From positions 190,394 through 254,393 of IMG/VR virus record IMGVR_UViG_3300009158_000031: 64,000 bases of DNA. The stretch is one strand, 5' to 3'. Made by a program: the position numbers and the translations under genes. Below, piece by piece: positions 20,568-41,801 of the stretch. The notes under the pieces were generated by a model. The model saw only the letters and a list, made by a program, of their open reading frames with translations. It searched no databases and was not told the DNA's origin. How positions within the stretch are numbered: position 1 is the first letter of the stretch; each line of letters begins with the position of its first letter.

Positions 20568-21323
20568 ATGAAATCTATACTAATTGTAATTATGTTCTTG
20601 GCATCTACTGCCTTTGCACAAGATACTTCAAAGATCAATCCAATCAAAATACAAATTGGTCTTGGCGGAAATTATACTGATGGAAATGCTAAAATACTTG
20701 GATTCAATACCAACAATTCTATTACATATACCTCACTAAATCGTGAGTGGTCTTTGCTGCCATCATTTATTTACTCACAAGTACAACAAGATAATGAGTT
20801 CAAACCCAGACAGCGAGAACTATACATAACCGGTGCTGTTCAAGAAAGACGAGGTTCCGACAAAATTATTTCGGCTTTTGAACTAGAGACTTCATTAGTA
20901 AAACAAATCCGATTAAGAACATCAATTGGTCTTGGATGGAGTTTCGATATAATTCGAACACCTAAAACTAAATTCATCATATCCGAAGCCGCTGTATATG
21001 AATCATATTTATCAGATTTGATAATTGATAAAAACCTACAATCGCTTAGAGCATCTACTCGAATTAGATTTTCCACTAATGGGAAAGTCAATACCGATTT
21101 TGTAGCACTTATACAACCTTCAATATGGAATGATCGAGGAGTTAGTGCAGCTAATAATACAAATTCTCGCATATCTGCAACGATTGCTATACCAGTTACC
21201 AAGAAATTACAATTTGGAATAACCTCTACATTTATTGGATCTACCTATTCAAATTTCATTAATTCTGGAATCAATCCCGCTGACATAAATACAACTTTTT
21301 CACTCATATATAAAAATCTATAA
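20568..21323 (+). CDS. outer-membrane beta-barrel protein (DUF481-like)
   Basis: Signal peptide AFA|Q, GGNYTDGN, amphipathic strands, C-terminal FSLIYKNL. Confidence 0.7.
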   Translation: MKSILIVIMFLASTAFAQDTSKINPIKIQIGLGGNYTDGNAKILGFNTNNSITYTSLNREWSLLPSFIYSQVQQDNEFKPRQRELYITGAVQERRGSDKIISAFELETSLVKQIRLRTSIGLGWSFDIIRTPKTKFIISEAAVYESYLSDLIIDKNLQSLRASTRIRFSTNGKVNTDFVALIQPSIWNDRGVSAANNTNSRISATIAIPVTKKLQFGITSTFIGSTYSNFINSGINPADINTTFSLIYKNL

Positions 21324-24067: not shown

Positions 24068-24087
24068 TCTCTAAATAAAAAAAACAT

Positions 24088-25612: not shown

Positions 25613-25639
25613 AAGGCTGCTCACTAGAGTGGCCTTTTT
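25613..25639 (+). terminator. intrinsic terminator
   Basis: AAGGCTGCTC-ACTA-GAGTGGCCTT then TTT. Confidence 0.75.
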
Positions 25640-25682
25640 GTGGTTTACACAGCGAGACTGCCCTATTACTCACCTTTACCAC

Positions 25683-26910: not shown

Positions 26911-27016
26911 AAAAAAAAAGCCCTCCAGCGTTCAAACTCTGAGTTTCAGGAATAAATAGAAATATAAACGAACAAAAAAGCGCGCAGCGGCTTCCACCTC
27001 TGAGTACCAAGAATAA

Positions 27017-27394: not shown

Positions 27395-27395
27395 G

Positions 27396-28016: not shown

Positions 28017-28026
28017 TATAAAGACT

Positions 28027-28425: not shown

Positions 28426-28580
28426 TGGATAATGGAAAACGTAATCAATTAAAACCTGTGAGAATCGCTGATGTTAATAAGTTGGTGGCTAATGATCCGA
28501 GGATTCTTATTAAAGTTAATCATAAAGGTGGAAGTGGAGTTTCTCTTATGAACACTAATAAAATTAAAGACCGAAAATAA
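28425..28580 (+). CDS. small basic protein (51 aa, missing from ORF track)
   Basis: TAATG coupling; fills the gap to 28583. Confidence 0.5.
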   Translation: MDNGKRNQLKPVRIADVNKLVANDPRILIKVNHKGGSGVSLMNTNKIKDRK

Positions 28581-28582
28581 GA

Positions 28583-29287
28583 ATGAGAAAGATAGCCTTA
28601 TATGAGCAATGGATAAATGAAATTGGTGATTCATCAGCCAAGCCATTCAAATGGAGTAGTCCTGTTATCGCTGTTAATATGAAGAGATGGATAGATGATT
28701 GTATCGAAGGAGCTGCAGACAAGAAGATGAGTGGAACTCAAGAAGATATTTACTATAAAACTAAAACATTTAGATATGAATTCCGATCGGATGTGACTAA
28801 TACAAATTATCATGTACACATCGGTGGATTTGTTGGTAGAAATATCTGGATTGCCTTTCAAGGAGAAAAACCTAAAGATTGGGTTGGATATCATATAATT
28901 GCCGGATTAGGATTTGGTGTTGAAGGAGATTTCGATAAAACTACTAATCTTAATGAACAATTCCGAGTAATGGCAACCGTTACCGAATGTGCCATTGATT
29001 TTCTACAACGATTCTTGGATGATGGACGAATCAAGATTGATAAATTTCACATGAAACCTAAGGCCGATCACGAAGAACAAAAAGGAATAGATTCTCGTCG
29101 AGCTAAACTATATGCCCCTTATATTAAAGCCGCATTCCGCAAACTCAAAACGAAGAAGGATTATTACATAGATCAAGAGGCAGATGGATTCGTTCTTCAT
29201 TTCGGAAAGGTCATAATGAACTCTCCTTATTCCACTTCAGTATTAGCATCAACCTTTGAAAATGAAGAATCCAATGAAATCAATTAA
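28583..29287 (+). CDS. hypothetical protein with capsid-targeting-like N-terminus
   Basis: MRKIALYEQWINE; RRAKLY. Confidence 0.65.
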   Translation: MRKIALYEQWINEIGDSSAKPFKWSSPVIAVNMKRWIDDCIEGAADKKMSGTQEDIYYKTKTFRYEFRSDVTNTNYHVHIGGFVGRNIWIAFQGEKPKDWVGYHIIAGLGFGVEGDFDKTTNLNEQFRVMATVTECAIDFLQRFLDDGRIKIDKFHMKPKADHEEQKGIDSRRAKLYAPYIKAAFRKLKTKKDYYIDQEADGFVLHFGKVIMNSPYSTSVLASTFENEESNEIN

Positions 29288-30344
29288 GCTATATGAAGCC
29301 TTCTTAACAGAAGGAGGCTGGGCAACAACCAAAACACAAGGAACCGTTCTGACTCCAGCTGTTATCGCTGAGGTTGTGAAGGTTATGGATCTGATCAATA
29401 CGGGATTCAATGGACATTTGAGAGAGCTTGAACTTCCCACTCTAGATATTCTAAAACCTATTGGCAGTGGAACTTGGTGGAGTGAAGATGTGACCGAACA
29501 ACCAGACAAAACTTATGGAGATGTCGATTACATGGTTGCCTATCCCACTTTGAAGCTCACTGCTGGTCGTGATAGAGAAGATGAGATTGCTACGGTGAAG
29601 CTATACAATACCGAGCTGCTCATGTGGTTAGAGGAAGAAGGTATCACCGATGTAGATATTGATGAGACGAAGAAAATATCTTCGGATGTTTCTCTTAAGT
29701 TAATTGCGATCGTTCCCTTTAATGGAACTGATGCATATGTTCAGGTTGATATGGTTGTTACTCACAAAGAGTATAGTGATTGGGCAGTATTCCGTATGAC
29801 TCCTATTCGTAACGTTAAAGGTTTTGTGCTAGGAAATCTCTACTCTTCATTTGGTGAAGTTCTAGATTTGTCTATTCAGGCAAGAGGAGTAAGAGCTAAA
29901 TTTGAAGGTCAGGTTATGAAGCCTTATTCTAAACGAGCTAATGTTGAGGATCGCATCATCTCACAAAATGCTGAATCATTCATGACCGATATCGCTCGTT
30001 TCTTTTGGGAACAGAGCGGAACAGATATTCCATTCACCGCTACTCCTATCGAATCTTGGAAGGGAATGGATCGCAACTCTCCTCGATTCGAAGATCTAGC
30101 CGAAGGAATTCGTCTGGTTGCCGAGACACTAGGTCAGCTAGACGAATTTGGAACTACTATTAAATACAAATCAGCTGCTGATCTACTAAATGCAGTGATT
30201 GCTCAATATACGAAGAAGATGATGGAAGCTTATAATTCTGCTAAATTTGATAAGGCAGAAACTCCAGCAGCAAAAGCCATTATCACTAAAGTTAGAGCAA
30301 CCATTGACGAATATATCAGTCTGGCTAAATCACTACTTACATAA
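29274..30344 (+). CDS. nucleotidyltransferase-like protein with capsid-targeting-like N-terminus
   Basis: MKSIKLYEAFLTEGG; IGS...GDVD...VQVD Pol-beta-type motifs. Confidence 0.6.
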   Translation: MKSIKLYEAFLTEGGWATTKTQGTVLTPAVIAEVVKVMDLINTGFNGHLRELELPTLDILKPIGSGTWWSEDVTEQPDKTYGDVDYMVAYPTLKLTAGRDREDEIATVKLYNTELLMWLEEEGITDVDIDETKKISSDVSLKLIAIVPFNGTDAYVQVDMVVTHKEYSDWAVFRMTPIRNVKGFVLGNLYSSFGEVLDLSIQARGVRAKFEGQVMKPYSKRANVEDRIISQNAESFMTDIARFFWEQSGTDIPFTATPIESWKGMDRNSPRFEDLAEGIRLVAETLGQLDEFGTTIKYKSAADLLNAVIAQYTKKMMEAYNSAKFDKAETPAAKAIITKVRATIDEYISLAKSLLT

Positions 30345-30351
30345 AAGTAAT

Positions 30352-30726
30352 ATGTTATACTATTCACCAAAAATTGCAGTCGGAGAATCGACTGTAGCAG
30401 GCAGAGGTGTATTTGCCATAGCCGATATAGAGGCTGGAGAGGTACTTGAAGAGTGCCACTTCTTTTTACTAACTAATGGTAATCATTCAGCTATGGATGA
30501 TACTTTAAAAGAGATGGTATTCGCATGGCCGGCATATAATGATGTTCATCAATTTGCTGTTGTACTAGGCAGTGGAACTGTTTATAATCATTCATATGAA
30601 AACAATGCAACCTGGGATACTGATGAAGCTAAATGCTGTTTCAGATTTTCTTCTACTCGAGACATAAAGGCCGGTGAAGAGATATTCACAAATTATAACC
30701 GAAGCGGAGGAAATCACTTTGATTGA
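30352..30726 (+). CDS. SET-domain methyltransferase
   Basis: GRGVFA..DI.AGE, YNHS, RDIKAGEEIFTNY. Confidence 0.9.
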   Translation: MLYYSPKIAVGESTVAGRGVFAIADIEAGEVLEECHFFLLTNGNHSAMDDTLKEMVFAWPAYNDVHQFAVVLGSGTVYNHSYENNATWDTDEAKCCFRFSSTRDIKAGEEIFTNYNRSGGNHFD

Positions 30727-30752
30727 TAAATATAAAAACACACAAAAGCTAA

Positions 30753-31670
30753 ATGGCTAATTCAACATACACAGATCTTCAAGTTCTTATTCAACGAATA
30801 AGAGGTAAGCGAGTTCTTCTTCTTACAACATCTAATAGATGGAGTGGTGATGAAGGAGGAAAACCTAAATCTACTCAATTGGCTGAGTTAATAGCCAGAT
30901 CTTTATACGACGATTCAACGGATTCTACTCTTTGTAAAGTAATAGATATTCCATCTCTCAATATTCACAACTGTGAAGGTAATGTATCTTCCGGAAGTGG
31001 TAATGGTTGTGGAGTTAAGGCTGCTGCCCTAAAGGATACCACTAAAAATCCTACTGGTAATCTTCGTTGTTGGGCTTCTATTAATAATGCCGATGATGAG
31101 TTATGGAAAGTTAGTAATGCTATATTCGAATCAGATGTAGTCCTCTTCTTTGCTTCTACAAGATGGGGTCAGGCAAATGCATTCTATCAAAAACTTATCG
31201 AACGTCTAACTTGGTTAGAGAATCGTCACACTACTCTTGGTGAATCTAATCTACTAGGAAATATTGAAGCTGGTGGATTCTTCATTGGACACAATTGGAA
31301 TGTAGAAGATGTAATGAATACTCAAAGAACGGTACTTCAGTATTTCGGATTTCAAGTTCCACCTCAACTTTTTCTTCACTGGCAATGGACTAATAGTGAT
31401 ACTAACGAAACTCAGAAAGGATATGAAGCTGATGCTAAAGACTTCAAAGAGGTTTGGAAAGTTGGAACATATCCTTTAGAGGAAAGTTTTAATCGTTGGT
31501 TGAATGAAGCTGGTTATGATGCTGGTTCTAGAAAACCTACTCCGGAAGAGGTTGAAATGTGCAAATCTCCAGAAGGATTTAATCAGATAAACCACTGCAA
31601 AGCTTTAGGACTTACTCCTCGTGAAGATGGAACCAAAGCCAAATCTAAAAAATATGGTGGTGACGCATAA
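30753..31670 (+). CDS. flavodoxin/NADPH-dependent FMN reductase-like protein with extra C-terminal module
   Basis: CEGNVS, RCWAS, SDVVLF..TRWGQ; internal SFNRWLNE. Confidence 0.7.
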   Translation: MANSTYTDLQVLIQRIRGKRVLLLTTSNRWSGDEGGKPKSTQLAELIARSLYDDSTDSTLCKVIDIPSLNIHNCEGNVSSGSGNGCGVKAAALKDTTKNPTGNLRCWASINNADDELWKVSNAIFESDVVLFFASTRWGQANAFYQKLIERLTWLENRHTTLGESNLLGNIEAGGFFIGHNWNVEDVMNTQRTVLQYFGFQVPPQLFLHWQWTNSDTNETQKGYEADAKDFKEVWKVGTYPLEESFNRWLNEAGYDAGSRKPTPEEVEMCKSPEGFNQINHCKALGLTPREDGTKAKSKKYGGDA

Positions 31671-32452
31671 TGAAACCGATAAAACTTTTTGAAGATTTTA
31701 TTAATGAATTCGATACAGGTAAAGTATTACTAGGTGATCCTTCTTTATTGGGTAGACCTAATAAATGGGAAGATCTCGGAATAGAGTTTGAACCTAATAC
31801 TGCTGACAAAACTCAATTAATACAATTGATAAAAGATTGGATTTTTAAAGTAAAGGCAGATCCAAAGATGGGACATATCCTTAAAGAATTGCTGCCCTTA
31901 AAAAAGAAGTTTCCGAAAATATTAGAACCATCTGAAGGTAGATCCGTCTATGAAGGTACTTCTCTTTATAGAGGAACTATAATACCATTTAAAGAAGTGT
32001 TATCACTAAAGGGTAAATGGAAACGTAACGACGCGGTTGATATTTTTGGTGGTAGCCTAAATCTCAGTACATCATATAATTGGGAAAGTATTAATAGAAA
32101 GGGATTCACTTCGTTTACACCATCTATCGAAATAGCGGCCACTTTTGCAGGAAGCCTTAGTTCAGAAAATTATAACGAAATTGTAGCATCTAAAACGGTT
32201 GTTAAAAGATTATTAGATGGATCCATTGATGGTATGATTCCGATGATTATTAAAATTAAAGACACACATCCCTTAGCAATTATGAATCCGGTGTTTACTC
32301 AATCAATTCACGAATTCATGAATGAATTTGAGGTATTTGTTGTTGGAAATAAAATCCGGGTTGATGAAGTTATAATTCCAGGATGGCATTACTACGAAAG
32401 AGATGCTAAAGAATTAGGAGTAGATCTTACAAAATATTTTAACATACAATGA
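31670..32452 (+). CDS. ADP-ribosyltransferase-fold protein with capsid-targeting-like N-terminus
   Basis: MKPIKLFEDFINE; LYRG, FTSFT...A..FA, EFEV. Confidence 0.6.
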   Translation: MKPIKLFEDFINEFDTGKVLLGDPSLLGRPNKWEDLGIEFEPNTADKTQLIQLIKDWIFKVKADPKMGHILKELLPLKKKFPKILEPSEGRSVYEGTSLYRGTIIPFKEVLSLKGKWKRNDAVDIFGGSLNLSTSYNWESINRKGFTSFTPSIEIAATFAGSLSSENYNEIVASKTVVKRLLDGSIDGMIPMIIKIKDTHPLAIMNPVFTQSIHEFMNEFEVFVVGNKIRVDEVIIPGWHYYERDAKELGVDLTKYFNIQ

Positions 32453-33057
32453 AACATATCCAAGGTTTTAATACATTCCTTAATGAAGGCGAAGGTTTAT
32501 TTGCTGATGCCGGTAAAGGATCTACTAAAGGAATTGGATATGGAACGCCAGAAAAAGCTAAAGAGACTATTAAGATCGCTGACAAAATGAAGGCAGACGA
32601 TCCAGGAAAAGCCGTTCAAATCGTTAATGCCATGCTCAATCGAGCTAAATACTCAAATGGTCAGAATGATGGCATGAGAGCAGCAATTCCCATCTTTCAA
32701 AAATGGTTAAAGGCCAATCAAGCATCTGAATCATTTTTAGGAGTTGATGAATTCATTCTAGAAAAACTTTGGCAAAAGGAAGTAGAATCTTCTCACCTTA
32801 ACGAAATTGAATATGACTCATCAACTGAAGAACTAACTATTACTTTTAACAATGGAGACCGCTACAGATATTATGAAGTTCCTAAATCCATCTTCCGAGA
32901 ATTTGCCAATGAGAAAACTATTCTAGGAAAGATTGGTGGAGGAATTGTCAAAGGAGCCAAGAAGCTATTTGGTAAGGATATTGACGAAGGTACATATGGT
33001 AAAAAATTCTGGTCACTCATTCGTCGAGGTGGCTATCAATACGAAAAACTCTCATGA
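32449..33057 (+). CDS. KTSC-domain protein with capsid-targeting-like N-terminus
   Basis: MKHIQGFNTFLNE; VESSHL..IEYD....L.I.FNNG..Y.Y.EVP. Confidence 0.75.
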   Translation: MKHIQGFNTFLNEGEGLFADAGKGSTKGIGYGTPEKAKETIKIADKMKADDPGKAVQIVNAMLNRAKYSNGQNDGMRAAIPIFQKWLKANQASESFLGVDEFILEKLWQKEVESSHLNEIEYDSSTEELTITFNNGDRYRYYEVPKSIFREFANEKTILGKIGGGIVKGAKKLFGKDIDEGTYGKKFWSLIRRGGYQYEKLS

Positions 33058-33719
33058 AAGAAATAAAATTATATGAGCAATGGCTCAATGAAATCGATGG
33101 TCCTGCAGATGGATCTCTATTCGGTACATCCGGAGTAGATTTTGGATTCATCGGTCTGCAAGATCCAGGAGACACACCAAATTCGTTTGAACCTAATATG
33201 GTTGAATCCTTTATTATTGATCTTCTTCAAAGACACAATAATACCGTTCCTTCTCCTGGCACACTTACCGTCGAGTATCTTGAAGATATCGAAAAGGTAC
33301 AAACCGGAATGAGTGATAAAGATCGATCATTTGTTCAGGCAGTTAATAATAATCCTATGGCTTTTCATGTTGAAGATGCCAAGAAAGCTGGTATTGATCT
33401 AGATGGTAAATGGTTAACTGAATGTTGGGATTATGCTACCAGTGTAGCAGGTACTGCAAAAGATATTTGGAAAGTAAAACGTCCATTTGAATTAAGCTCA
33501 AAAGTCAAGGGGTTGGTTCCTACTAAATCCTTCTCATTTCCTTCAACTAATGCGGCCGGATCTTTTTATGTAGCAAAAAAGGTTGCAGAGAAATATCCTC
33601 AATTGAAAGAATCTCAAATGGAAGTGGCTACTCAAATAGCAAATTCACGAGTTGTTGCCGGTGTGCATCATCCATTAGATATTGCCGTTGGAAAAATGTT
33701 AGCCTTAGGCTTATTATAA
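33054..33719 (+). CDS. PAP2/acid-phosphatase-fold protein with capsid-targeting-like N-terminus
   Basis: MKEIKLYEQWLNE; K-x6-RP, SFPSTN, SRVVAGVHHPLD. Confidence 0.75.
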   Translation: MKEIKLYEQWLNEIDGPADGSLFGTSGVDFGFIGLQDPGDTPNSFEPNMVESFIIDLLQRHNNTVPSPGTLTVEYLEDIEKVQTGMSDKDRSFVQAVNNNPMAFHVEDAKKAGIDLDGKWLTECWDYATSVAGTAKDIWKVKRPFELSSKVKGLVPTKSFSFPSTNAAGSFYVAKKVAEKYPQLKESQMEVATQIANSRVVAGVHHPLDIAVGKMLALGLL

Positions 33720-34273
33720 TGTTCAAGAAATTTAGACAATTCATTAATGAAGATATTCATATACCTTCCGGTAAATGGATAGACACTGACCTTAAAGGTC
33801 AGGATGATGATATGATGCAACTCATATGGACAATGTATACTGACACATACTCTAAACAAGGATTAGATTTCTCTGCCGATGATTATGCTGAACTTAAAAC
33901 TAAATACCAAGCAACATTCTTAAAGGATGTTGACCATGATCGTATTCCAGATGCCTTTATTATATACAAGAAAACGAAGTATGGAAATAAGATTGCTCTT
34001 CTAGGAACTAATGATAAGAAGACTGCAAAACGAGATCTTCTAGAAAAAACTATTTCATTACTTAAAAATCCTGGTTGGTTGTTAGAGGCCTCTCGTAAAA
34101 TGGAAGAGATTCTTTCAAATTCAAATGTTCCTTATATTGAAGATCCTGAAATCATTGCTGATATTGTCGGTAAAGACAAGAAACCTGAAATGGTTAAACA
34201 TGGATATTATACAAGACTTCTTTCAAAAACACCAAAGCGTATCTTAAAACGCATGTATGGTAAGGTCAAATAG
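33719..34273 (+). CDS. hypothetical protein with capsid-targeting-like N-terminus
   Basis: MFKKFRQFINE. Confidence 0.65.
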   Translation: MFKKFRQFINEDIHIPSGKWIDTDLKGQDDDMMQLIWTMYTDTYSKQGLDFSADDYAELKTKYQATFLKDVDHDRIPDAFIIYKKTKYGNKIALLGTNDKKTAKRDLLEKTISLLKNPGWLLEASRKMEEILSNSNVPYIEDPEIIADIVGKDKKPEMVKHGYYTRLLSKTPKRILKRMYGKVK

Positions 34274-34357
34274 ACCAAAATGACCTAGTAGTTATTCGGC
34301 GGATCCCGTCGGTTATTAAGTAAACCCACTTTTAGGAGATATGTTCTTATAAATAAT

Positions 34358-37300
34358 ATGAGAAACAAACATATGAAAAATCCTATTTTAATTTGCCTGT
34401 TACTATTTAATTTAATTGTAATTGGACAAACAACACCTAAAGAAAGATACATAAACAATTCTGATTATCTTTCTAAAAACTCCTTAGTCGATTACAAAAG
34501 CTATTACGGAGATTCCATACAAGGATTCGACGAAGCAGCTATGAAAGTTGAACTACTAAGACGAAACGTTTTTGGTTCAGAATACATCAACTACATTGCT
34601 CTTGTAAAAAGAGAATGGGTAAATCAAAAGTACGGTATCAAACCTGTACTACCTATCAATTCAAACAACCGACCTATTGGAGGTCCTAACTCAGTTAATT
34701 CACCTGGTAATGCTTGTGTGAATGAAGACTTTGAGCTTACTGCACCTGGAGCTTATAATGGAATGAATTCTGTTTTAGGATGGACAATTCAAAGTGGACA
34801 AAATACTTCCAATATCTGTTGTGGAAATCCTACATATGGTGCTGGCTGTGTTGCTAATCCTATTGCTAATTGGAATGCAGGTAGTCCTGAATTTTCTATT
34901 GTTGCTACTCCAATACTACCTGCTCCTAGTTGTGCTAATCCTCCTGGATTTAGTATTGACAATGTATCAATACCTAATTCACCTCTTGGCGGTAACCGAG
35001 TTGCAAGACTACAAAACTCATGTCCAACCGGTTTGATGACTCGAATTATGACACAATTTCCTGTTTCAAATTCTAATACCTTATTTCAATTTTGTTATGC
35101 TGGTTCATGGGATGGTGTTCATGAATGTTGTGGACAACCTGCTTTTAGAATCGATATGTATAATTGTACAGGTTCATTAATCCCAATACCATGTGCCAAT
35201 GTAAGCCTAACTCCTTCCGGACAATCTTGTCAAAGTGGAGTTCCTGGATATCAGGTAACCAGTGGAGTTTCATGGGTTAATTGGCAAACAAAATATATTG
35301 ACTTAACTCCTTATATTGGTCAGTGTATTAGAATTGTGGTAACTTGCTCAGATTGTTCTTATTCTGGACATCATGGAACTGCTTATTTTGATGCAAGATG
35401 CGGTGGTCAATTAGTTGGAGTTGGATTAGGTGGAGTTGGTGGAAACATTGCAGGACCTGTTAGTTATTGTGCTGGTTCAAATCAAGCTATTATTGCCGCA
35501 CCATTGGGATACTCGTCATATCAATGGATATCTCCTATCACAGGAACAATTCCTGCTAATGCAGGAGGTACAGCTCCAGTATTAACCATAAGTCCAGTAG
35601 TTGCAGGTTTAGTGTATACAGTTCAGTTAAACTCACCATCAGGGTGTTCTTATATTGCAACCAATACAATCATGCCTACTCTTGTAAACATTGCAGGTAT
35701 TGGTTCAGGCACAAGTTGTGCAGGAGGATCAAGTGGAACGGGTACTGTTCAAGGTAATGGCAGTGGCACAGGATACAATTATACTTGGGTAAATTCAAAT
35801 AATGCTGTAGTTGGTACCTCAGCAACAGTAAGTGGACTGCTTCCAGGAACATATAGCGTAACTATAACTGGTCTTGGCGCTGCAGGATGTGGTTCAGCAA
35901 CATCAACTATATCAATAGGAGTTGGAATACCTCAAATGCAAAATCTATTAAAACCGTATTGTGGTTCTCAAGCCTATTTAAGTGTAACGGGTAATAGTGT
36001 TCAGTGGTCTACCAACAATACAGCTATCTCCGCTCCATTAGGAGTGGCAATGGGATACACAGTAAACAATCCAGTACAGGCTTCAGTATACACAGTTACC
36101 TATACTTCATTACAAAATTGTAATGAAGCAGCTTCATTCACCCTAATACCATCTCCGCCGGGCAGTATATCATTACTAACTACTTCTGTTTGTTTAAACT
36201 CGACAAATGGCAGTGGAACTATTAATCTAACTCCTGCATCTGGTTCTCCTCCTGGAGCTAATTCATATTCAGTATGGAATTCTAATAATACTCCGGTTTA
36301 CAATTCATCATTGTCTCCTACTAATCAAAATAATTATTTGTTTGGAAACATGGGAACCGGTAGTTATCAAGTAAGAGTATTTGATGGTTCCTGTGCATAC
36401 ACAACTTCCTTTATTATACCTACTCATGTATTTTCTCCTACATTAAGTCCAACCTCAACAACTCTATGTCCTGGTGGAGGTATTGCAGCCGGAGTAGTAT
36501 TTAGTATTCCACCATCATTATCTCAATACACTTACTCTTGGACACCTAATATCTTTTTAGCAGGAAACACTCAACAATCAACGATTATCATACCAAATCT
36601 TGCAGTAGGTACGCAATCAAATATAACTTACTCAGTTGTAATTACTCCTACTGCTATTAATTGTCCGATGACTCGTACATTAAATTTATGGGCAATCAAT
36701 CCACCAATTCCAACTATTACTGCAATACCTAATATGTGTAACAATATGCTTCCATATCAAGTATTGGCTAATCCCAGTGGTGGTATCTTTACCGGAGTTG
36801 GAATGAGTACATTAGGTTTAATCTCTCCGACTGCTTCACTATTAGGAATCAATAACTTTACATATGCCATTTCAATTAGTACTTGCGCATCATCTAATAC
36901 TGGAAGTTATCAGGTATCATATTTCAATACTTCATCATTAAGCTCTTCAATAAATCCTATATGTTCTACTAATTCAACAATAAATCTTATGACTATTGTT
37001 CAGAATACCTTAGGATCTTGGTCAGGTAATTATATAACGAATAACATATTCAATCCAGCAAATCTAAATGGAGTATACTCATTAACCTACAATAATTTAT
37101 CAACACCAAATCCTACAGTATGTCCTTCATCTACTCAAATGAATATATCGGTTACTAATACAATAATTCCGACTATTGCAAATTCCAATCCATTCTGTAC
37201 GAATGCCTCCTCTTTTGTATTGATCGCTAATCCAAATGGAGGAATCTGGTCTAACAATTCTGCAGTGAGCGGTTTAGGTATTGTAACTCCTTCATTGACA

Positions 37301-39325
37301 TCTCCTACAAATACAACGGTTAATTATGTCGTTAATGTTGGTCCATGTATAAACACAAACACATTCAACATATATCCATCAACTTTCAATACGGCTTCTT
37401 TAACTGGATCTATCCCTAATTTATGCGTAACGAGCTCATCAATAAATCTAATGTCAATCGTACAAAATACGACTGGATCTTGGTCAGGAATGAATGTTAC
37501 TCAAAACATATTCAACCCTTCAGGATTACCGACCGGAAATTATACTTTAACATACAATACCAACTCGGCTCCTAATGTTACTCTATGTCCAGATAACCGA
37601 ACAATAAACATATCGGTTCTTAATCCGGCATCTCCGAACATTACTACATTCGGACCTATATGTAGCAAAGATGCTATTATGCAAATGACCGTTACTCCTA
37701 ATTCTGGTAGTTGGATTTCTACTCCATATCTAAACATTAATGGAATATTAAATCCTTCGCTATGTCCTATTGGAATTAATGCCATTCAATATGTAATAGG
37801 AACTAATACTTGTTCGGCTCAACAAACAAAAACCTTTGTGGTTGAGATGTTCATTCCATCAACGATAACAAATCAAATACCTGACTTGTGTAATACCAGC
37901 TCTCCCATAAATCTTAATTCATATTCTGGTTTTCCTGGATCTTGGTCAGGATTAGGAATCAATGGTTCAATGTTTACTCCATCGAATTCAGGAACATTAA
38001 TTCTAGTACATACCACATCATCATCTAGTGGTTTATGTCCTAGTACGTCAAGCATATCAGTTAGAGTATATTCATTACAATCTCCAGTAATAATCAAGCC
38101 AAATTCTGTATGTAACACATATGCGCCTTTCCAATTACAAGTAAATCCAATCGGTGGTATATTCGGAGGTAATGGATCTAATACTAACGGAATTTTTAAT
38201 CCAGCATATGGAGCGATAGGAAACAATATAATTAATTACAGCATTTCTGCCGGTCCTTGTATAGCATATGCACAGACTACTGTTAATATTGAGAAATTTA
38301 TATCGGCTGATCTAGATCGATACCCTAAAACCGTTTATTGTAAAGGTACTGAATATCCTTTTAATCTGAATTCGTTAGTCAAAAATCCAAATTATAATTG
38401 GTCTGGTCCTGGAGTAAATGGTTATATGTTCGATCCACAAATGGCAAACATCGGAAACAACCTAATATATTATCGAACGCATTCTGCACCAACGGCTTCA
38501 TTATGTCCGGATGAAAAATCATTTAACATAAGGGTTGCTCAAATAAGTAAACCCATCATATCGCTATCTGATTCAATTGGTTGTGTTCCTCTTAGAGTAA
38601 TTCTCAATTCAAACGAAAATACTGGATTATCTTCTTGGAAATTTAGTAATGGATATTCTAGTGAAGCCAATTCTCTTGCATATACATTTACTTCAAGCGG
38701 AATACATTCAATAATATTCTCATATATCAATGATGAAGGTTGTGTATCGCCAAATCAAATGATTACTCTTATTAGAGTTGATGAGGTACCTTTTCCCAAG
38801 TTTCAATTACCAAAATCCATTTATGCAGGAGATTCAGAAATCCAAGCAATAAATCTAACTCCTAATGTAGGAAGTTACACTTACACATGGATGGTATCTA
38901 ATGGATATTCAGTAAACACAATTAATCTTGCATACGATCCCAAGAAAATAGGCAAGTACGAAATAACATTAATTGCAAAGACGGTTAATGGATGCACGGC
39001 ATCTACTAGAAAAATGATAGAGATACAAAACGAATTTGAAGTACATATCCCAAATACTTTCACTCCTAATAGAGATGGTCTCAACGATTATTTTCTTCCA
39101 GTATTTTCTGACTATGGAGTTGAGTTATCTTTTTATACACTAGAGATTTTCGATCGATGGGATCACTTAATTTATAGATCAATCGATCCTAAAAAAGGAT
39201 GGGATGGAAAAGCCAAAAATGAATTATGTCAACAAGGATCCTATGTATACAGACTTAAGTTTTCTGATAAAGAGAAGAATGTGTATGAGAAGATTGGACA
39301 TGTTCTCCTTTTAGGATCCGATTAA
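34358..39325 (+). CDS. large secreted adhesin-like protein with PKD-like repeats and T9SS type-B (gliding-motility/CHU_C) C-terminal domain
   Basis: Signal peptide then Gln; Cys/Ser/Thr/Asn-rich repeats; IPNTFTPNRDGLND...IFDRW...GWDG...GSYVY. Confidence 0.9.
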   Translation: MRNKHMKNPILICLLLFNLIVIGQTTPKERYINNSDYLSKNSLVDYKSYYGDSIQGFDEAAMKVELLRRNVFGSEYINYIALVKREWVNQKYGIKPVLPINSNNRPIGGPNSVNSPGNACVNEDFELTAPGAYNGMNSVLGWTIQSGQNTSNICCGNPTYGAGCVANPIANWNAGSPEFSIVATPILPAPSCANPPGFSIDNVSIPNSPLGGNRVARLQNSCPTGLMTRIMTQFPVSNSNTLFQFCYAGSWDGVHECCGQPAFRIDMYNCTGSLIPIPCANVSLTPSGQSCQSGVPGYQVTSGVSWVNWQTKYIDLTPYIGQCIRIVVTCSDCSYSGHHGTAYFDARCGGQLVGVGLGGVGGNIAGPVSYCAGSNQAIIAAPLGYSSYQWISPITGTIPANAGGTAPVLTISPVVAGLVYTVQLNSPSGCSYIATNTIMPTLVNIAGIGSGTSCAGGSSGTGTVQGNGSGTGYNYTWVNSNNAVVGTSATVSGLLPGTYSVTITGLGAAGCGSATSTISIGVGIPQMQNLLKPYCGSQAYLSVTGNSVQWSTNNTAISAPLGVAMGYTVNNPVQASVYTVTYTSLQNCNEAASFTLIPSPPGSISLLTTSVCLNSTNGSGTINLTPASGSPPGANSYSVWNSNNTPVYNSSLSPTNQNNYLFGNMGTGSYQVRVFDGSCAYTTSFIIPTHVFSPTLSPTSTTLCPGGGIAAGVVFSIPPSLSQYTYSWTPNIFLAGNTQQSTIIIPNLAVGTQSNITYSVVITPTAINCPMTRTLNLWAINPPIPTITAIPNMCNNMLPYQVLANPSGGIFTGVGMSTLGLISPTASLLGINNFTYAISISTCASSNTGSYQVSYFNTSSLSSSINPICSTNSTINLMTIVQNTLGSWSGNYITNNIFNPANLNGVYSLTYNNLSTPNPTVCPSSTQMNISVTNTIIPTIANSNPFCTNASSFVLIANPNGGIWSNNSAVSGLGIVTPSLTSPTNTTVNYVVNVGPCINTNTFNIYPSTFNTASLTGSIPNLCVTSSSINLMSIVQNTTGSWSGMNVTQNIFNPSGLPTGNYTLTYNTNSAPNVTLCPDNRTINISVLNPASPNITTFGPICSKDAIMQMTVTPNSGSWISTPYLNINGILNPSLCPIGINAIQYVIGTNTCSAQQTKTFVVEMFIPSTITNQIPDLCNTSSPINLNSYSGFPGSWSGLGINGSMFTPSNSGTLILVHTTSSSSGLCPSTSSISVRVYSLQSPVIIKPNSVCNTYAPFQLQVNPIGGIFGGNGSNTNGIFNPAYGAIGNNIINYSISAGPCIAYAQTTVNIEKFISADLDRYPKTVYCKGTEYPFNLNSLVKNPNYNWSGPGVNGYMFDPQMANIGNNLIYYRTHSAPTASLCPDEKSFNIRVAQISKPIISLSDSIGCVPLRVILNSNENTGLSSWKFSNGYSSEANSLAYTFTSSGIHSIIFSYINDEGCVSPNQMITLIRVDEVPFPKFQLPKSIYAGDSEIQAINLTPNVGSYTYTWMVSNGYSVNTINLAYDPKKIGKYEITLIAKTVNGCTASTRKMIEIQNEFEVHIPNTFTPNRDGLNDYFLPVFSDYGVELSFYTLEIFDRWDHLIYRSIDPKKGWDGKAKNELCQQGSYVYRLKFSDKEKNVYEKIGHVLLLGSD

Positions 39326-39328
39326 AAT

Positions 39329-39390
39329 TGTTAATAACTTTCCCGTAATAAATTTTTTTATTCCAAAAAGTTTTATTATATTTGTATATA
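39329..39390 (+). promoter_or_regulatory. promoter repeat copy 7
   Basis: Same architecture and spacing. Confidence 0.8.
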
Positions 39391-39409
39391 CAATTTAAAC
39401 AAATATACT

Positions 39410-39604
39410 ATGGAAAATAATTTTGAAGTATCCGATCTTGAATTACTCACAACATCGGAATTAAAAACTCTACTAATCGATTTATTCGATGGTAATGCAG
39501 GTGAAATTCTTTATGGTTTTCGAGAAATGGGAATTACCAAAGATGCTAATCTTAAATCGGCAATAATCCGATACATCATTCGTAAACAACCCATCAATGC
39601 ATAA
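39410..39604 (+). CDS. hypothetical early protein
   Basis: ORF after promoter. Confidence 0.6.
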   Translation: MENNFEVSDLELLTTSELKTLLIDLFDGNAGEILYGFREMGITKDANLKSAIIRYIIRKQPINA

Positions 39605-39917
39605 ACGAAGAAGCGATCGTAACCATCTCATCTACAAAATAGAAAATCTCTCAACCGGAGAATTCTATATAGGAGTTACAGTCGTAACCGGTAGAGCATA
39701 TCTTAAATCTCTTAAATCTCGATGGAAGCGACATATCTATAAAGCAATGGTGCTTCGTGAAGAATGGTTATTTCCAAAAGCGATTCGCGAATATGGCGAA
39801 TCTCAATTTAAACCTGAGATTATCGAAATTGTACGTGGTAAATCTACCGCATTCGGAAGAGAATCTCAACTTATTAACGAAATCCGACCAGCATACAACA
39901 CACGAATGAAATGTTAA
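39597..39917 (+). CDS. GIY-YIG nuclease
   Basis: LIYKIEN..TGEFYIG..RWKRH...AIREYG...E...YN. Confidence 0.85.
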   Translation: MHKRRSDRNHLIYKIENLSTGEFYIGVTVVTGRAYLKSLKSRWKRHIYKAMVLREEWLFPKAIREYGESQFKPEIIEIVRGKSTAFGRESQLINEIRPAYNTRMKC

Positions 39918-40598: not shown

Positions 40599-41801
40599 AT
40601 GGCAACATTAGTTTGGTTAACCCATTCATTTCGTACAGACTCTAGGCTAACATCTAAATTATCCGGTCCTTGTACATTCGTATATTATTCACCATACTAC
40701 TTTGCTGGTGATCGGGAAAAACAAATTCTGAAACAATGTTCAACGGCTAATCTTGAAGCATTTTACGAATCCCTTGATATTATGCGTAAATCGCTTAAGG
40801 CTATTGGCCACGAGTTTTACGTCTTCAAACAATCAAATCCTATTGAACATATCAATAGCCTAATTGATAAACATGGATTTGATCGAGTTGTAATAGATCT
40901 TCCTCTTTTTGGAATGTGGAAAACAACCGATCCAATGCAAATCAAAGTTCCTTTTGAATTAATCGATTCTGATCTTGTCGACGATACTTGTTTTAATATG
41001 ACGGCTAAATCTAGGTGGATGTCACATACTCGCAAAATATCTACACACAAACCAAATCAATGGAATTCTGAAATTGTACCAAATCCTATTAATGAAGCAA
41101 TCAAAAGTTATCCGCAATACACTAAGAATAACTTGATTATGCCTCACATCATAACATCTCGTGCATCGGCTATGGCTCCTACATATGCTCAAACTCGAGA
41201 TAAACATAATGGCCAAACTCGTTTATCTACTGCATTTCAAAATGGTACGGTAGATCCTTGCAATATGTTCTATAGCATCGCAAACGATTTTCTAAAATCT
41301 GGCGCAGACTTCTCGATAAATGAAGGTGCCCATGCTGCAATGCTTCGTCAATTTGCTTTTCGTGAAATGACAATCATTCAAACTCGTCGAGCTAACCTAA
41401 CCATGGAAGATTCCCCAATGCAATGGGCACAACAATTTATAACAGCAACCTCTCTACAAAATCTAAAGAGTCAAACAAATCCAGATAGCACTTTAACATT
41501 TGAACAAATCAAAACGGCTAGTACCAGCGATACATTAATAAATACAATTCTCGCTGAATCGTTTCAAGTTGGTGTAATGCCAAATCGTGCTAGAATGTTC
41601 TTTGCCGGATGGATGTTTTACAATGCACCAACTGGTCAACAAGCACTTGAATGGTTAATCGATACATTTGATCTTCTTCTCTTAGATGGTCAATGTCCTA
41701 CAAATTATACACAATGTACATCCGCTATGAATATGCAATATGGTAAAGTAATGTTGCTTAATCGTCATAACGTTAAAGCATTACTTGCCTACGAAAATTA
41801 A
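40599..41801 (+). CDS. divergent photolyase/cryptochrome-family protein
   Basis: LVWL...R.D, TRLS...G, LRQFAFRE, GVMPNRARM, LLDG...N. Confidence 0.7.
   Translation: MATLVWLTHSFRTDSRLTSKLSGPCTFVYYSPYYFAGDREKQILKQCSTANLEAFYESLDIMRKSLKAIGHEFYVFKQSNPIEHINSLIDKHGFDRVVIDLPLFGMWKTTDPMQIKVPFELIDSDLVDDTCFNMTAKSRWMSHTRKISTHKPNQWNSEIVPNPINEAIKSYPQYTKNNLIMPHIITSRASAMAPTYAQTRDKHNGQTRLSTAFQNGTVDPCNMFYSIANDFLKSGADFSINEGAHAAMLRQFAFREMTIIQTRRANLTMEDSPMQWAQQFITATSLQNLKSQTNPDSTLTFEQIKTASTSDTLINTILAESFQVGVMPNRARMFFAGWMFYNAPTGQQALEWLIDTFDLLLLDGQCPTNYTQCTSAMNMQYGKVMLLNRHNVKALLAYEN

What the first reader, a model, noticed from the sequence alone, without database searches (positions are those of the whole stretch)
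34358..39325. Phage-encoded 1655-aa T9SS type-B cargo (SprB-like surface adhesin)
Seen: Sec signal followed by Gln, Cys-containing low-charge repeats, PKD-like domains and a clear CHU_C/gliding-motility CTD. The ORF is intact over 5 kb, with TATAAATA at 34348 just upstream. Established: type-B CTD proteins are exported by the Bacteroidota T9SS with PorP/SprF-type partners. Inference: the phage uses the host T9SS or gliding track to alter the infected cell surface (aggregation with new hosts, receptor masking, grazer avoidance) or to jam secretion. No PorP/SprF gene is recognisable in this window.
Basis: partly seen in the sequence, partly recalled or inferred. Interest (0 to 1): 0.8.

Follow-up and report, generated by a model that had tools for sequence, protein, structure and literature searches.

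The report
Jumbo-phage copy of host surface adhesin
A freshwater jumbo phage of Bacteroidota carries an intact, selectively maintained gene for a 1,650-residue host-type cell-surface fibre, with the signals for export by the host's Sec and type IX secretion systems; related phages swap its tip domain with bacterial versions, which suggests phages re-dress the surface of the cells they infect.

Summary
ORF 34358-39325 is intact and has a Sec signal peptide followed by Gln. After it come a helical segment, a Cys-rich jelly-roll head, about 15 Ig-like domains and a type-B T9SS sorting domain (PF13585 52.7 bits; TIGR04131 47.3 bits).

The window is the last 64 kb of a 254-kb IMG/VR viral contig. 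Three further assemblies and bridging contigs from another sample carry the same junctions, so it is not a chimera.

The protein belongs to a full-length family of Bacteroidia chromosomal proteins of unknown function. It is not a SprB homologue: it has no SprB repeats.

Family members sit on at least four unrelated phage backbones and are under purifying selection (dN/dS 0.11-0.24). The gene is mosaic. The stalk of all 11 phage-context alleles forms one clade. The head region comes in two types, each 74-94% identical to a bacterial head, and phage monophyly is rejected there. A close relative of this phage carries the other head type at the same locus.

No PorP/SprF gene was found here or next to any homologue, so it is an orphan cargo, presumably using a host shuttle.

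Export, display and biological role are inferred. Phage T9SS cargo has been noted before (type A, 2019-2020).

The parts
34358..39325 (+). Cargo gene: 1655-codon ORF. The probable true start is the ATG at 34373, giving 1650 residues.
34358..34426 (+). Sec-type signal peptide (residues 1-23), with the predicted cut before Gln24 (Bacteroidetes Q-rule).
   Evidence: Sequence inspection and hydrophobicity heuristic. Signal peptide plus Gln is conserved in phage and bacterial homologues. Q-rule: PMC5837995.
34427..34702 (+). N-terminal ~90-residue helical segment (residues 24-115). It is absent from the ~1550-residue alleles. Function unknown; possibly a pro-region.
   Evidence: AF2 helices at 27-34, 59-68 and 73-92, with low to moderate pLDDT. 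Absent in L003/L012 alleles. No Pfam match.
34703..35452 (+). Cys-rich beta jelly-roll 'head' (residues 116-365), head type A. It is the most conserved part of the protein.
   Evidence: AF2 pLDDT ~80. Foldseek matches: CBM4-2, CBM61, CBM27, MAM-Ig of PTPRK and the GH85 C-terminal sandwich. It is 94% identical to bacterial P0006 and 92-98% to other phage alleles; omega is 0.02-0.1.
35453..38821 (+). Stalk: a string of about 14 Ig-like beta-sandwich domains (residues 366-1488). It includes a ~155-residue two-domain unit repeated 4-5 times (residues 740-1430).
   Evidence: AF2 all-beta, pLDDT 80. Repeat unit. Foldseek top hits are the GhpA Ig chains.
38822..39010 (+). PKD-like domain (residues 1489-1551).
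   Evidence: PKD_4, 27.9 bits against a cut-off of 27. The A3 profile matches ColH PKD domains.
39041..39301 (+). T9SS type-B C-terminal sorting domain (residues 1562-1648).
   Evidence: PF13585 52.7 bits, TIGR04131 47.3 bits. The profile hits the C-terminus of the T9SS-secreted protein GhpA at E 3.9e-11.
38558..39322 (+). C-terminal anchor module (residues 1401-1655) with its own history. It is nearest to the allele of the backbone relative L015, not to the alleles that share the head.
   Evidence: Identity to head-sharing alleles is only 30-45%. Nearest are P0017/P0021/P0030. Holding the six head-sharing alleles together is rejected (p-AU 7e-69). dS is 0.19 here against 0.034 elsewhere versus L002.
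34348..34355 (+). TATAAATA box about 20 nt upstream of the conserved ATG. Function unproven.
   Evidence: Present but not enriched (5 against 12.4 expected). A TTATAnnTA box lies at the same distance in six phage loci.
39597..39917 (+). GIY-YIG homing-endonuclease-like gene directly downstream of the cargo gene, also present in L002 and L015. It could promote exchange at this locus (inference).
   Evidence: PHROG homing endonuclease, E 1e-10. Synteny.
20568..21323 (+). Phage-encoded DUF481 outer-membrane beta-barrel with a signal peptide plus Gln. It is not PorP/SprF, and no link to the cargo is shown.
   Evidence: PF04338, 23.9 bits against a cut-off of 21.1, covering the full-length model. 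Viral DUF481 clusters exist in the ESM Atlas.

Best explanation
The gene is a host-derived accessory gene ('moron') of a freshwater Bacteroidota jumbo phage. It encodes a cell-surface fibre.

Proposed pathway (inferred from the sorting signals):
1. The protein is made in the infected cell and crosses the inner membrane by Sec. Signal peptidase I cuts before Gln24.
2. The C-terminal type-B domain is recognised by the host type IX secretion system.
3. The protein leaves the translocon on a host PorP/SprF-like shuttle. Because no shuttle gene lies next to it, it behaves as an 'orphan' type-B substrate.
4. It stays anchored on the outer membrane through that shuttle, holding a lectin- or MAM-like jelly-roll head at the end of a stalk of about 15 Ig-like domains.

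What the data show:
- The architecture and the sorting signals.
- The phage location.
- Purifying selection.
- A modular history. Phage alleles share one phage-specific stalk, and probably one anchor lineage. The head region has been exchanged with bacterial alleles at least twice, and exchanged between unrelated phages.

What is inferred:
- Export and surface display.
- The purpose. I think the phage gives the infected cell an adhesin tip of the same type as its host lineage's own. This keeps or increases specific adhesion to the host's substrate or to kin cells during a long jumbo-phage infection, so that progeny are released next to susceptible cells.
- Receptor masking or superinfection exclusion is a secondary possibility.
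For: Architecture and sorting signals.

Phage location, not a chimera:
- The window equals the end of the 254-kb UViG 3300009158_000031. Two other UViGs are 99.996% identical over 24,965 bp, and L002 is 94.6-98.6% identical.
- Contigs of DNA run X4 bridge 33700-34462 and 36524-39401 with no mismatches.
- Phage gene content.

Host origin:
- There are 834 homologues, collinear over their full length, on bacterial chromosomes (Aurantibacillus, a Sphingobacteriaceae bacterium, Bacteroidia MAGs).
- Bacterial contexts were verified for P0006 (MreB/MreC/PBP2), P0010 and P0047 (RbfA, Rho).

Maintained function:
- dN/dS is 0.11 (window against L002) and 0.19-0.24 (against L001/L013/L014), with dS up to ~1.
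- Head omega is 0.01-0.1.

Spread among phages: the family is found on window-type, L001-type and L003-type backbones and on a 385-kb UViG.

Cassette behaviour:
- L015 flank proteins are 71-93% identical to the window's, but its cargo is only 48% identical.
- L001/L013/L014 cargo is 73-75% identical, but their backbones are unrelated to the window's.

Modular history:
- Trees of 19 context-labelled rows. In the stalk (residues 701-1400) all 11 phage rows form one clade (SH-aLRT 99.9). In the N-terminal part (116-700) phage monophyly is rejected (delta lnL 361, p-AU 4.5e-6).
- There are two head types, each 74-94% identical to a bacterial head but only 45% identical to each other.

Orphan substrates using an unlinked shuttle, and strict CTD-shuttle pairing, are established in F. 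johnsoniae (PMC12618676). Anchoring of type-B cargo on PorP-like proteins: PMC9143113.

Weak hint of expression: metatranscriptome run X1 holds contigs >=95% identical (three of the four >=99%). Two lie inside the gene (37314-37464, 37827-38098) and two in the upstream gene. Run X2 holds a 90-95% relative over much of the gene.
Against: - No experiment shows secretion, display or any phenotype.
- The RNA-library contigs are low depth and may be carried-over DNA.
- No PorP/SprF partner was identified in the window or in any homologue's neighbourhood, and the other ~190 kb of the phage genome was not examined.
- The window's CTD is only ~40-44% identical to that of the bacterial lineage that shares its head. 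This is at or below the level at which CTDs were seen to share a shuttle in F. johnsoniae (PMC12618676), so use of the host shuttle is not assured.
- The head's ligand is unknown, and the fold matches are generic jelly-rolls (TM to target about 0.6).
- The host is inferred only from homology and GC content.
- The phage or bacterium label is known for only 19 of 106 alleles, and two of the phage labels rest on IMG/VR loci that are 95-98% identical.
Confidence: 0.6

Rival explanations
1. Superinfection exclusion or secretion jamming. The phage fibre is made in order to occupy the host's type-B shuttle or translocon, or to cover the surface. This would displace the host's own adhesins or receptors so that competing phages can no longer adsorb. 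Adhesion by the head would be irrelevant.
For: Type-B cargo needs a specific shuttle and competes for it (PMC12618676). Phage alleles keep a phage-specific stalk and anchor lineage. T9SS cargo genes are variable islands in another phage (PMC7468147). Recombination recurs at the anchor-module boundary.
Against: Jamming would not need a head held at omega 0.01-0.1 and 92-99% identical across unrelated phages and a bacterium. It would not need repeated import of bacterial head types either. Nor would it need a 1,100-residue stalk under purifying selection.
Confidence: 0.15
2. Virion component. The protein is a tail fibre or capsid decoration built of Ig-like domains, and the CHU_C domain is just a beta-sandwich reused for binding.
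For: Ig-like and PKD domains are common on virions. The gene follows an array of nine genes with a capsid-targeting-like N-terminal motif. T9SS sorting-domain ORFs lie near head genes in some gut phages (PMC6949934).
Against: A Sec signal peptide plus Gln is conserved in all alleles; it would send the protein out of the cytoplasm where virions assemble. The protein is collinear from end to end with chromosomal bacterial proteins. It has no PHROG match. It lacks the MK.I..YE.FLNE motif carried by its upstream neighbours. The tail-fibre-like genes lie elsewhere, at 61.6-64 kb on the minus strand.
Confidence: 0.05
3. Neutral passenger. The gene is a recently captured host gene with no role for the phage.
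For: The protein is host-like over its full length. The gene's GC content is above the flanks in several phages: 0.36 against 0.26 in L001, and 0.34 against 0.27 in L012.
Against: The ORF is intact at 5 kb in every phage allele seen. dN/dS is 0.11-0.24 over dS up to ~1. The gene is present on at least four phage backbones, including 254-kb and 385-kb genomes. The phage stalk clade is old and diversified.
Confidence: 0.03
4. The contig is bacterial (a genomic island) or a mis-assembly, so the gene is not phage-encoded at all.
For: No capsid, portal or terminase gene lies inside the 64-kb window. PHROG hits are mostly to enzymes.
Against: IMG/VR lists 122-, 207- and 254-kb viral contigs with the identical locus. 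Genes are dense, almost all on one strand and mostly without any Pfam match. The window contains a homing endonuclease, two RNA ligases, an endolysin, a Peptidase_S74 tail-fibre chaperone and tRNAs. Independent assemblies and bridging contigs agree.
Confidence: 0.03

Closest known systems
Bacteroidia chromosomal 'gliding motility-associated C-terminal domain-containing proteins' of 1550-1730 residues (for example in Aurantibacillus circumpalustris and Sphingobacteriaceae bacterium CNR22; the nearest is P0006 / MAG contig CAMCZO010000069)
   Same: They are collinear over the full length: signal peptide plus Gln, helical segment, Cys-rich head, Ig-like stalk, PKD, type-B CTD. Overall identity is 45-58%, and 94% in the head with P0006. 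The window protein is a member of this family.
   Different: The window copy is encoded on a phage. Its stalk and anchor module belong to a phage-only clade, and only its N-terminal ~700 residues are of the P0006 type. The family has no studied member, so its function is unknown.
Phage-encoded T9SS cargo reported earlier: 'Cryophage' type-A CTD proteins (Bellas et al. 2020, PMC7468147) and T9SS sorting-domain ORFs in gut phage lineages (de Jonge et al. 2019, PMC6949934)
   Same: These are phage genes with a T9SS sorting domain, presumed to use the host system. In Cryophage they are among the most variable genes between phage variants, as this locus is here.
   Different: The Cryophage proteins are type-A CTD enzymes or PA14 proteins, which use the PorV shuttle and are attached to A-LPS or released. 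This one is a type-B CTD fibre, which needs a specific PorP/SprF-like shuttle and stays bound to it (PMC9143113, PMC12618676). It is a full-length copy of a host protein with a documented domain-wise exchange history.
SprB, the gliding adhesin of Flavobacterium johnsoniae
   Same: It is a type-B CTD, a long repetitive cell-surface filament, and is bound to a PorP-like protein (SprF) (PMC9143113).
   Different: There are no SprB repeats (PF13573), no adjacent sprF-like gene, and the protein is about a quarter of the size I recall for SprB (~6,500 residues, from memory). Other phages do carry true SprB-repeat CHU_C proteins: LR756502 has a 1670-residue protein with 13 repeats, and L003 has a 736-residue one.
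GhpA, the T9SS-secreted grappling-hook protein of Aureispira (PDB 9flp and related entries; bioRxiv 10.1101/2024.01.29.577165)
   Same: It gives the best structural match to the stalk (Foldseek E 2.8e-26). The family profile's CTD aligns to GhpA residues 5804-5886 of 5898 at E 3.9e-11.
   Different: GhpA is 5898 residues, identity is only ~16%, and the head is different. The window protein shows no evidence of hook assembly.
Orphan type-B substrates of F. johnsoniae (Fjoh_1123, Fjoh_1720, Fjoh_4934) served by the unlinked shuttle Fjoh_1677 (PMC12618676)
   Same: These are type-B cargo with no neighbouring porP/sprF gene. This is the likely mode of handling here.
   Different: The analogy is one of gene organisation only. 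No homology to these proteins was tested, and the shuttle for the phage protein is unidentified.

Membership tests
T9SS type-B CTD cargo (TIGR04131 / PF13585) | Type-B sorting domain at the extreme C-terminus, scoring above the curated cut-offs | tested here: met
   PF13585: 52.7 bits against 27, residues 1562-1642. TIGR04131: 47.3 bits against 35, residues 1563-1648 of 1655.
T9SS type-B CTD cargo (TIGR04131 / PF13585) | N-terminal Sec signal peptide (in Bacteroidota usually followed by Gln) | tested here: met
   Judged by inspection and a hydrophobicity heuristic only, with no dedicated predictor. Conserved in all homologues. Q-rule: PMC5837995.
T9SS type-B CTD cargo (TIGR04131 / PF13585) | Five conserved CTD motifs A-E needed for secretion (PMC12618676) | not tested
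   The motif sequences are in a figure that is not held. Only the HMM match over model positions 1-79 of 86 speaks to this.
T9SS type-B CTD cargo (TIGR04131 / PF13585) | Cognate PorP/SprF-like shuttle, commonly encoded directly downstream | tested here: not met
   No PF11751 match in 30 otherwise unannotated window ORFs. The other large ORFs had PHROG matches to unrelated families or none. None is adjacent in the 10 other phage loci with gene calls (L001-L004, L012-L015, L027) or in the bacterial loci L005, L016 and L028. This is not disqualifying: 3 of 12 F. johnsoniae substrates are orphans (PMC12618676). The rest of the 254-kb genome was not examined.
T9SS type-B CTD cargo (TIGR04131 / PF13585) | Secretion that depends on the T9SS and surface anchoring | not testable with these tools
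   Needs expression in wild-type and T9SS-mutant hosts.
SprB family (gliding adhesin) | SprB repeats (PF13573) | tested here: not met
   None at E<=0.01 on the whole protein or at E<=1 on seven pieces. The same library finds 13 repeats in the LR756502 phage protein.
SprB family (gliding adhesin) | sprF-like gene downstream, and movement on the gliding track | tested here: not met
   Downstream are a 64-residue ORF and a GIY-YIG endonuclease gene. Movement on the track is not testable here.
Phage-encoded T9SS cargo (as in PMC7468147 and PMC6949934) | The gene lies on a bona fide phage genome | tested here: met
   IMG/VR contigs of 122-254 kb carry the identical locus. Phage gene content. Independent assemblies and bridging contigs.
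Phage-encoded T9SS cargo (as in PMC7468147 and PMC6949934) | The cargo gene is a variable island between related phages | tested here: met
   L015 has the same backbone (71-93% amino-acid identity in the flanks) but its cargo is 48% identical.
Bacteroidia 1550-1730-residue head-stalk-CTD family (unnamed) | Full-length collinear homology | tested here: met
   93-100% of the query is covered at 45-58% identity to bacterial members, with E = 0. Placed in the trees.
PKD domain | Pfam PKD/PKD_4 above the gathering score | tested here: inconclusive
   27.9 bits against a cut-off of 27 on the whole protein; 16.3 bits on a piece that begins inside the domain. The profile matches ColH PKD domains.

The most novel reading that the evidence does not exclude
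Freshwater jumbo and huge phages of Bacteroidota maintain their own lineage of a T9SS 'display scaffold': a phage-specific Ig stalk plus a type-B anchor module. They re-tip this scaffold by recombination with the head domain of whichever host lineage they infect. The infected cell then shows the host's own recognition or adhesion tip and stays attached to kin cells or to the shared substrate, which steers progeny to susceptible hosts. On this reading, head type would be a readable marker of host range, and a phage-encoded or specially recruited shuttle would serve the phage-type anchor.
Probability: 0.15. Interest if true: 0.8.

Novelty: new variant of a known kind. Interest (0 to 1): 0.6.

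Why it matters
Phage genes with T9SS sorting signals have been mentioned twice in passing. Those reports covered type-A cargo in a cryoconite phage and sorting-domain ORFs in gut phages, and neither gave a mechanism.

This case differs in three ways:
- It is a type-B cargo. Type-B cargo stays bound to a specific outer-membrane shuttle, so the protein should be displayed on the infected cell rather than released.
- It is a complete copy of a host surface fibre.
- It has a clear modular history: phage-specific stalk and anchor, with heads exchanged with bacteria and between unrelated phages.

If the inference is right, large phages of a major freshwater phylum actively redesign the adhesive surface of infected cells. 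The head allele may then report which host lineage a phage infects. That would be useful for host assignment in metagenomes, and for understanding particle attachment and aggregation in lakes.

The gene also offers a natural test set of CTD variants for the unsolved question of how type-B CTDs are matched to their shuttles.

Tried and rejected
- **TATAAATA as a T4-like late promoter.** Rejected as evidence: 5 matches against 12.4 expected. The relaxed form TTATAHHTA gives 16 against 24.7.
- **Megablast of 26-46 kb against GenBank phages.** No match.
- **tblastn of the protein against GenBank phages.** Only C-terminal matches, in two huge phages and one small contig.
- **PHROGs on the cargo protein.** No family.
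- **Pfam on seven pieces at E<=1.** Nothing for the helical segment, the head or the central stalk.
- **PDB sequence search with the head profile.** No real hit.
- **PorP/SprF search.** None found. The one outer-membrane barrel in the window is DUF481, with no NCBIfam or PDB sequence match.
- **IMG/VR scan with the DUF481 protein.** It found only this phage's own contigs, so co-occurrence with the cargo could not be tested.
- **Look-up of the Aurantibacillus protein P0055.** Not on record.
- **Genome-contig scan.** Only one MAG was returned. It is labelled Chitinophaga pinensis, but its flanks are 31% GC, so the label is doubtful.
- **Upstream alignments of phage and bacterial loci.** No shared promoter.
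- **Rfam on the window.** Only the two tRNAs.
- **Positive selection on the C-terminal module.** Considered and rejected. Between the closest alleles the excess divergence there is synonymous as well (dS 0.19 against 0.034, omega 0.11), which points to recombination.
- **The full-length tree.** It places the window clade as sister to bacterial P0006. This proved to be driven by the N-terminal ~700 residues only.
Full report
**1. The observation**

The window has one uninterrupted ORF at 34358-39325 on the + strand (1655 codons).
- Pfam places CHU_C (PF13585) at residues 1562-1642 (E 4.7e-14, 52.7 bits, cut-off 27) and a marginal PKD_4 at 1489-1551 (27.9 bits, cut-off 27).
- NCBIfam places TIGR04131, the T9SS type-B sorting domain, at 1563-1648 (47.3 bits, cut-off 35).
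- The N-terminus MRNKHMKNPILICLLLFNLIVIG/QTTP has the form of a Sec signal peptide followed by Gln (inspection and a hydrophobicity heuristic). Every homologue examined keeps a signal peptide followed by Gln (..IGQTTP..KAQVG..NAQCP). This matches the Bacteroidetes Q-rule (PMC5837995).
- The protein has 48 Cys in regular pairs and 7.5% charged residues. A ~155-residue two-domain unit is repeated 4-5 times between residues 740 and 1430.

Two corrections apply.
- The conserved start is the ATG at 34373 (Met6). The relative L015 has no upstream ATG.
- TATAAATA at 34348 is present but the motif is not enriched in the window (5 matches against 12.4 expected). A TTATAnnTA box lies about 20 nt upstream of the conserved ATG in six phage loci. 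This is suggestive only.

**2. Is it phage, and is the assembly sound?**

Gene content says phage.
- Nearly all genes are on the + strand and most have no family match.
- PHROG and Pfam hits: two RNA ligases, thymidylate synthase, DHFR, an endolysin, a transglycosylase, a GIY-YIG homing endonuclease, two DNA-polymerase exonuclease-like genes, a 'minor coat protein' family, and a Peptidase_S74 tail-fibre chaperone beside fibre-like genes on the minus strand at 61.6-64 kb.
- There are two tRNAs.

The assembly is reproduced independently.
- The window is identical to the last 64 kb of IMG/VR contig UViG_3300009158_000031 (254,393 bp).
- Contigs from two other samples (122 kb and 207 kb) are 99.996% identical over 24,965 bp spanning the gene and both flanks.
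- A fourth assembly (L002) is 94.6-98.6% identical and syntenic on both sides.
- In DNA run X4, one contig covers 33700-34462 and another covers 36524-39401, both without mismatch. Both gene junctions are therefore bridged in another sample.

The 'assembly chimera' refutation fails.

Evidence for expression is weak.
- A lake metatranscriptome (X1) holds four short contigs at >=95% identity, three of them >=99%. Two lie inside the gene and two in the upstream gene.
- A sediment metatranscriptome (X2) holds a 90-95% relative across much of the gene.
- Both are at low depth, and DNA carry-over cannot be excluded.

**3. What the protein is**

- AF2 on residues 1-480 with 40 homologues gives helices at 27-92, a beta jelly-roll at 120-355 (pLDDT ~80) and an Ig-like domain at 366-467.
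- Foldseek matches the jelly-roll to carbohydrate-binding modules (CBM4-2, CBM61, CBM27, CBM16), to MAM-Ig of PTPRK and to the C-terminal sandwiches of GH85 enzymes.
- The ESM Atlas finds the same head fold at the N-terminus of many Bacteroidota type-B CTD proteins.
- AF2 on residues 481-1655 gives an all-beta chain of Ig-like domains (mean pLDDT 80). Its best structural match is the Ig chain of GhpA, the T9SS-secreted grappling hook of Aureispira (E 2.8e-26).
- The family profile's CTD aligns to the last ~85 residues of GhpA (E 3.9e-11).
- There are no SprB repeats.

The architecture is therefore: signal peptide - helical segment - lectin/MAM-like head - about 15 Ig-like domains - type-B CTD. 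That is a cell-surface fibre.

**4. Relatives**

The big protein search returned 834 hits. The best are collinear over 93-100% of the length.
- Named bacterial members are ~45% identical: Aurantibacillus circumpalustris, Sphingobacteriaceae bacterium CNR22 and Bacteroidia MAGs.
- The closest bacterial copies, P0006 and its near-identical MAG copy L011, are 58% identical. P0006 lies beside mreB, mreC, PBP2 and rodA.
- P0010 and P0016 are tandem paralogues in a Bacteroidia MAG, next to type-A T9SS cargo genes.
- P0047 lies beside rbfA and rho.
- None of these bacterial loci has a PorP/SprF gene next to the cargo gene.

Closer copies (73-97%) and a large group of ~1550-1620-residue alleles lie in phage-like contexts.
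- L002 and L015 have the same backbone as the window.
- L001, L013 and L014 have other backbones that share only a ~50% identical transglycosylase (L001, L014) or nothing (L013) with the window. L001 and L014 resemble each other downstream of the gene.
- L003, L004, L025 and L027 form a third backbone with a rhomboid gene and a second CHU_C protein.
- L012/L022 is a 385-kb contig listed in IMG/VR.

Two GenBank huge phages (LR756502, 642 kb; LR745206, 634 kb) also encode CHU_C proteins. One is 1670 residues with 13 SprB repeats. Type-B cargo genes are thus recurrent in large Bacteroidota phages.

**5. Selection**

- Nei-Gojobori dN/dS is 0.11 for window against L002 and 0.19-0.24 for window against L001/L013/L014, at dS 0.76-0.98.
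- It is 0.25-0.30 between phage and bacterial copies.
- The head is the most constrained part (omega 0.01-0.1). Residues 201-300 are 99% identical to the bacterial copy at dS 0.7.

The gene is maintained by selection in phages.

**6. Mosaic history**

Sliding windows and region-wise BLAST show three segments.
- Residues 1-700 are 87-99% identical to the L001-type phage alleles. They are also closest to bacterial P0006: 94% in the head, 61% in 366-700.
- Residues 701-1400 are about equally close (66-74%) to L001-type and L003-type phage alleles. They are far from P0006 (47-58%).
- Residues 1401-1655 are only 30-45% identical to the alleles that share the head. They are nearest to P0017, the allele of the backbone relative L015.

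A tree of the C-terminal module rejects holding the six head-sharing alleles together (delta lnL 117, p-AU 7e-69).

I then built trees from the 19 alleles whose context I could label (11 phage, 8 bacterial).
- In the stalk (701-1400) all phage alleles form one clade (SH-aLRT 99.9).
- In the C-terminal module the bacterial alleles fall on one side (support 87).
- In the N-terminal part (116-700) phage monophyly is rejected (delta lnL 361, p-AU 4.5e-6).
- Parsimony on the 105-row region trees gives 3, 1 and 1 phage/bacterium changes for the N-terminal, middle and C-terminal parts.

Two head types exist.
- Type A is carried by the window, P0001-P0005 and bacterial P0006 (94%).
- Type B is carried by P0017, P0020, P0008, P0045 and bacterial P0047 (74-82%).
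- The two types are only 45% identical to each other.

Even between the nearest alleles (window and L002), dS is 0.19 in residues 1401-1655 against 0.034 elsewhere, with omega 0.11. This marks a recombination boundary near residue 1400, not positive selection.

The backbone comparison points the same way.
- L015 flank proteins are 71-93% identical to the window's, but its cargo is only 48% identical (head type B).
- L001/L013/L014 cargo is 73-75% identical although those backbones are unrelated to the window's.

A GIY-YIG endonuclease gene lies directly downstream in the window, L002 and L015. It may promote exchange at the locus; this is inference.

**7. Mechanism**

Established knowledge:
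- T9SS substrates have a Sec signal and a CTD.
- Type-B CTDs are collected from the translocon by specific PorP/SprF-like shuttles and remain bound to them at the surface (PMC9143113, PMC12618676).
- Nine of the twelve F. johnsoniae type-B genes have the shuttle gene next door. The three orphans share an unlinked shuttle. CTD-shuttle pairing is highly specific, with crosstalk between CTDs that share a high level of sequence identity (PMC12618676).

Inference for this gene:
- The phage protein is exported by host Sec and the host T9SS.
- It is handled as an orphan type-B substrate by a host shuttle and displayed on the infected cell.
- The head is the most constrained part. It occurs in discrete types shared with bacterial lineages, and it has been imported repeatedly onto a phage-specific stalk and anchor.
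- The selected function therefore most likely resides in what the head binds, not merely in occupying the secretion system.

I favour a role in keeping or boosting host-type adhesion of the infected cell, to substrate or to kin cells. Surface masking or exclusion is the main alternative. None of this was tested.

One weak point is the CTD. The window's CTD is only ~40-44% identical to that of the bacterium that shares its head, so which shuttle serves it is open. The remaining ~190 kb of the phage genome was not searched for a shuttle.

**8. Comparison with what is known**

- Membership in the type-B CTD cargo class is met on the two sequence criteria. It is untested for the five motifs and for actual secretion.
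- Membership in the SprB family is not met.
- Phage-encoded T9SS cargo is already in the literature. Cryophage carries type-A CTD enzymes, described as variable islands (PMC7468147). T9SS sorting-domain ORFs occur in gut phages (PMC6949934). Phage proteins that obey the Q-rule were noted for P. gingivalis phages (PMC10367356).
- I found no paper describing type-B cargo in phages, or any that combines 'huge phages' with T9SS. The library searched is incomplete.

I therefore rate this a new variant of a known kind. The phenomenon is known. The type-B, shuttle-anchored, full-length host-fibre version and its modular head exchange are new.

**9. Verdict**

The finding is real and the phage context is secure. 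Its annotation as T9SS type-B cargo is well supported. 'SprB-like' should be read as an analogy only. The functional story remains inference, sharpened by the head-versus-stalk phylogenetic discordance. Interest 0.6.

Noticed in passing
window 27017-34273 (+): Nine ORFs (starts 27017, 27396, 28027, 28583, 29274, 31670, 32449, 33054, 33719) begin with M[KR].I..[YF]..[FW][IL][NT]E, for example MKSIPTYHEFLNE and MKEIKLYEQWLNE. The motif occurs nowhere else in the window. The protein bodies are unrelated to one another (one KTSC, one PAP2). The motif resembles the capsid-targeting sequence of T4 internal proteins (concept in PMC3012670; the T4 sequence itself is recalled from memory). This suggests an array of packaged or ejected proteins immediately upstream of the cargo gene.
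   Followed up: partly
window 20568-21323 (+): A phage-encoded 251-residue DUF481 outer-membrane beta-barrel with a signal peptide followed by Gln (..AFAQD). PF04338 scores 23.9 bits against a cut-off of 21.1. The ESM Atlas has viral DUF481 clusters. No link to the cargo gene is shown. An IMG/VR scan found only this phage's own contigs.
   Followed up: partly
window 10214-10513, 45800-46336, 50226-50540 (+): Further envelope-targeted candidates. There is a 99-residue ORF with a signal peptide (..LSYSQTE). The transglycosylase (SLT) has an N-terminal hydrophobic segment like a signal-anchor. A 104-residue ORF has a lipoprotein-like signal (..LTLGSC). Judged by heuristic only.
   Followed up: no
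L003 2393-4603, L027 905-3334: The L003-type phages carry a second type-B cargo gene (736-809 residues; SprB repeat, PKD, CHU_C) beside a rhomboid protease gene, about 5 kb upstream of their copy of the large cargo gene.
   Followed up: partly
L032 1789-6801 (LR756502) and L033 4489-6987 (LR745206): Two unannotated GenBank huge phages (642 kb and 634 kb) encode CHU_C proteins. One is 1670 residues with 13 SprB repeats. The other is 832 residues with an ALK/LTK glycine-rich domain, Ig_7 and PKD. A SpoVR-like gene and a glutamate-synthase-like gene follow the first.
   Followed up: partly
window 39597-39917 and 40599-41801: A GIY-YIG homing-endonuclease-like gene lies directly downstream of the cargo gene in the window, L002 and L015. 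The 400-residue ORF at 40599-41801 is missing from the 97%-identical relative L002 (only its first 22 residues match), so it is an indel between close strains.
   Followed up: partly
window 36872-36946 (residues 839-863): A 25-residue in-frame indel in the stalk separates the window allele from L002.
   Followed up: no
window 34476-36500, DNA run X4: Assembly of the head and proximal stalk is fragmented, and summed contig depth is 2-5 times that of the flanks. Several strains or genomes with near-identical heads probably co-occur in that sample.
   Followed up: no
window 25979-26512 (-) and 22000-30000: GC rises to 0.37-0.40 between 22 and 30 kb. The only sizeable minus-strand ORF in the window's interior (177 residues) looks non-coding by its translation. 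Rfam found no RNA family there.
   Followed up: partly
L011 (CAMCZO010000069): The MAG carrying the closest bacterial homologue is titled 'Chitinophaga pinensis', but its flanks are 31% GC, so the species label is probably a placeholder.
   Followed up: no
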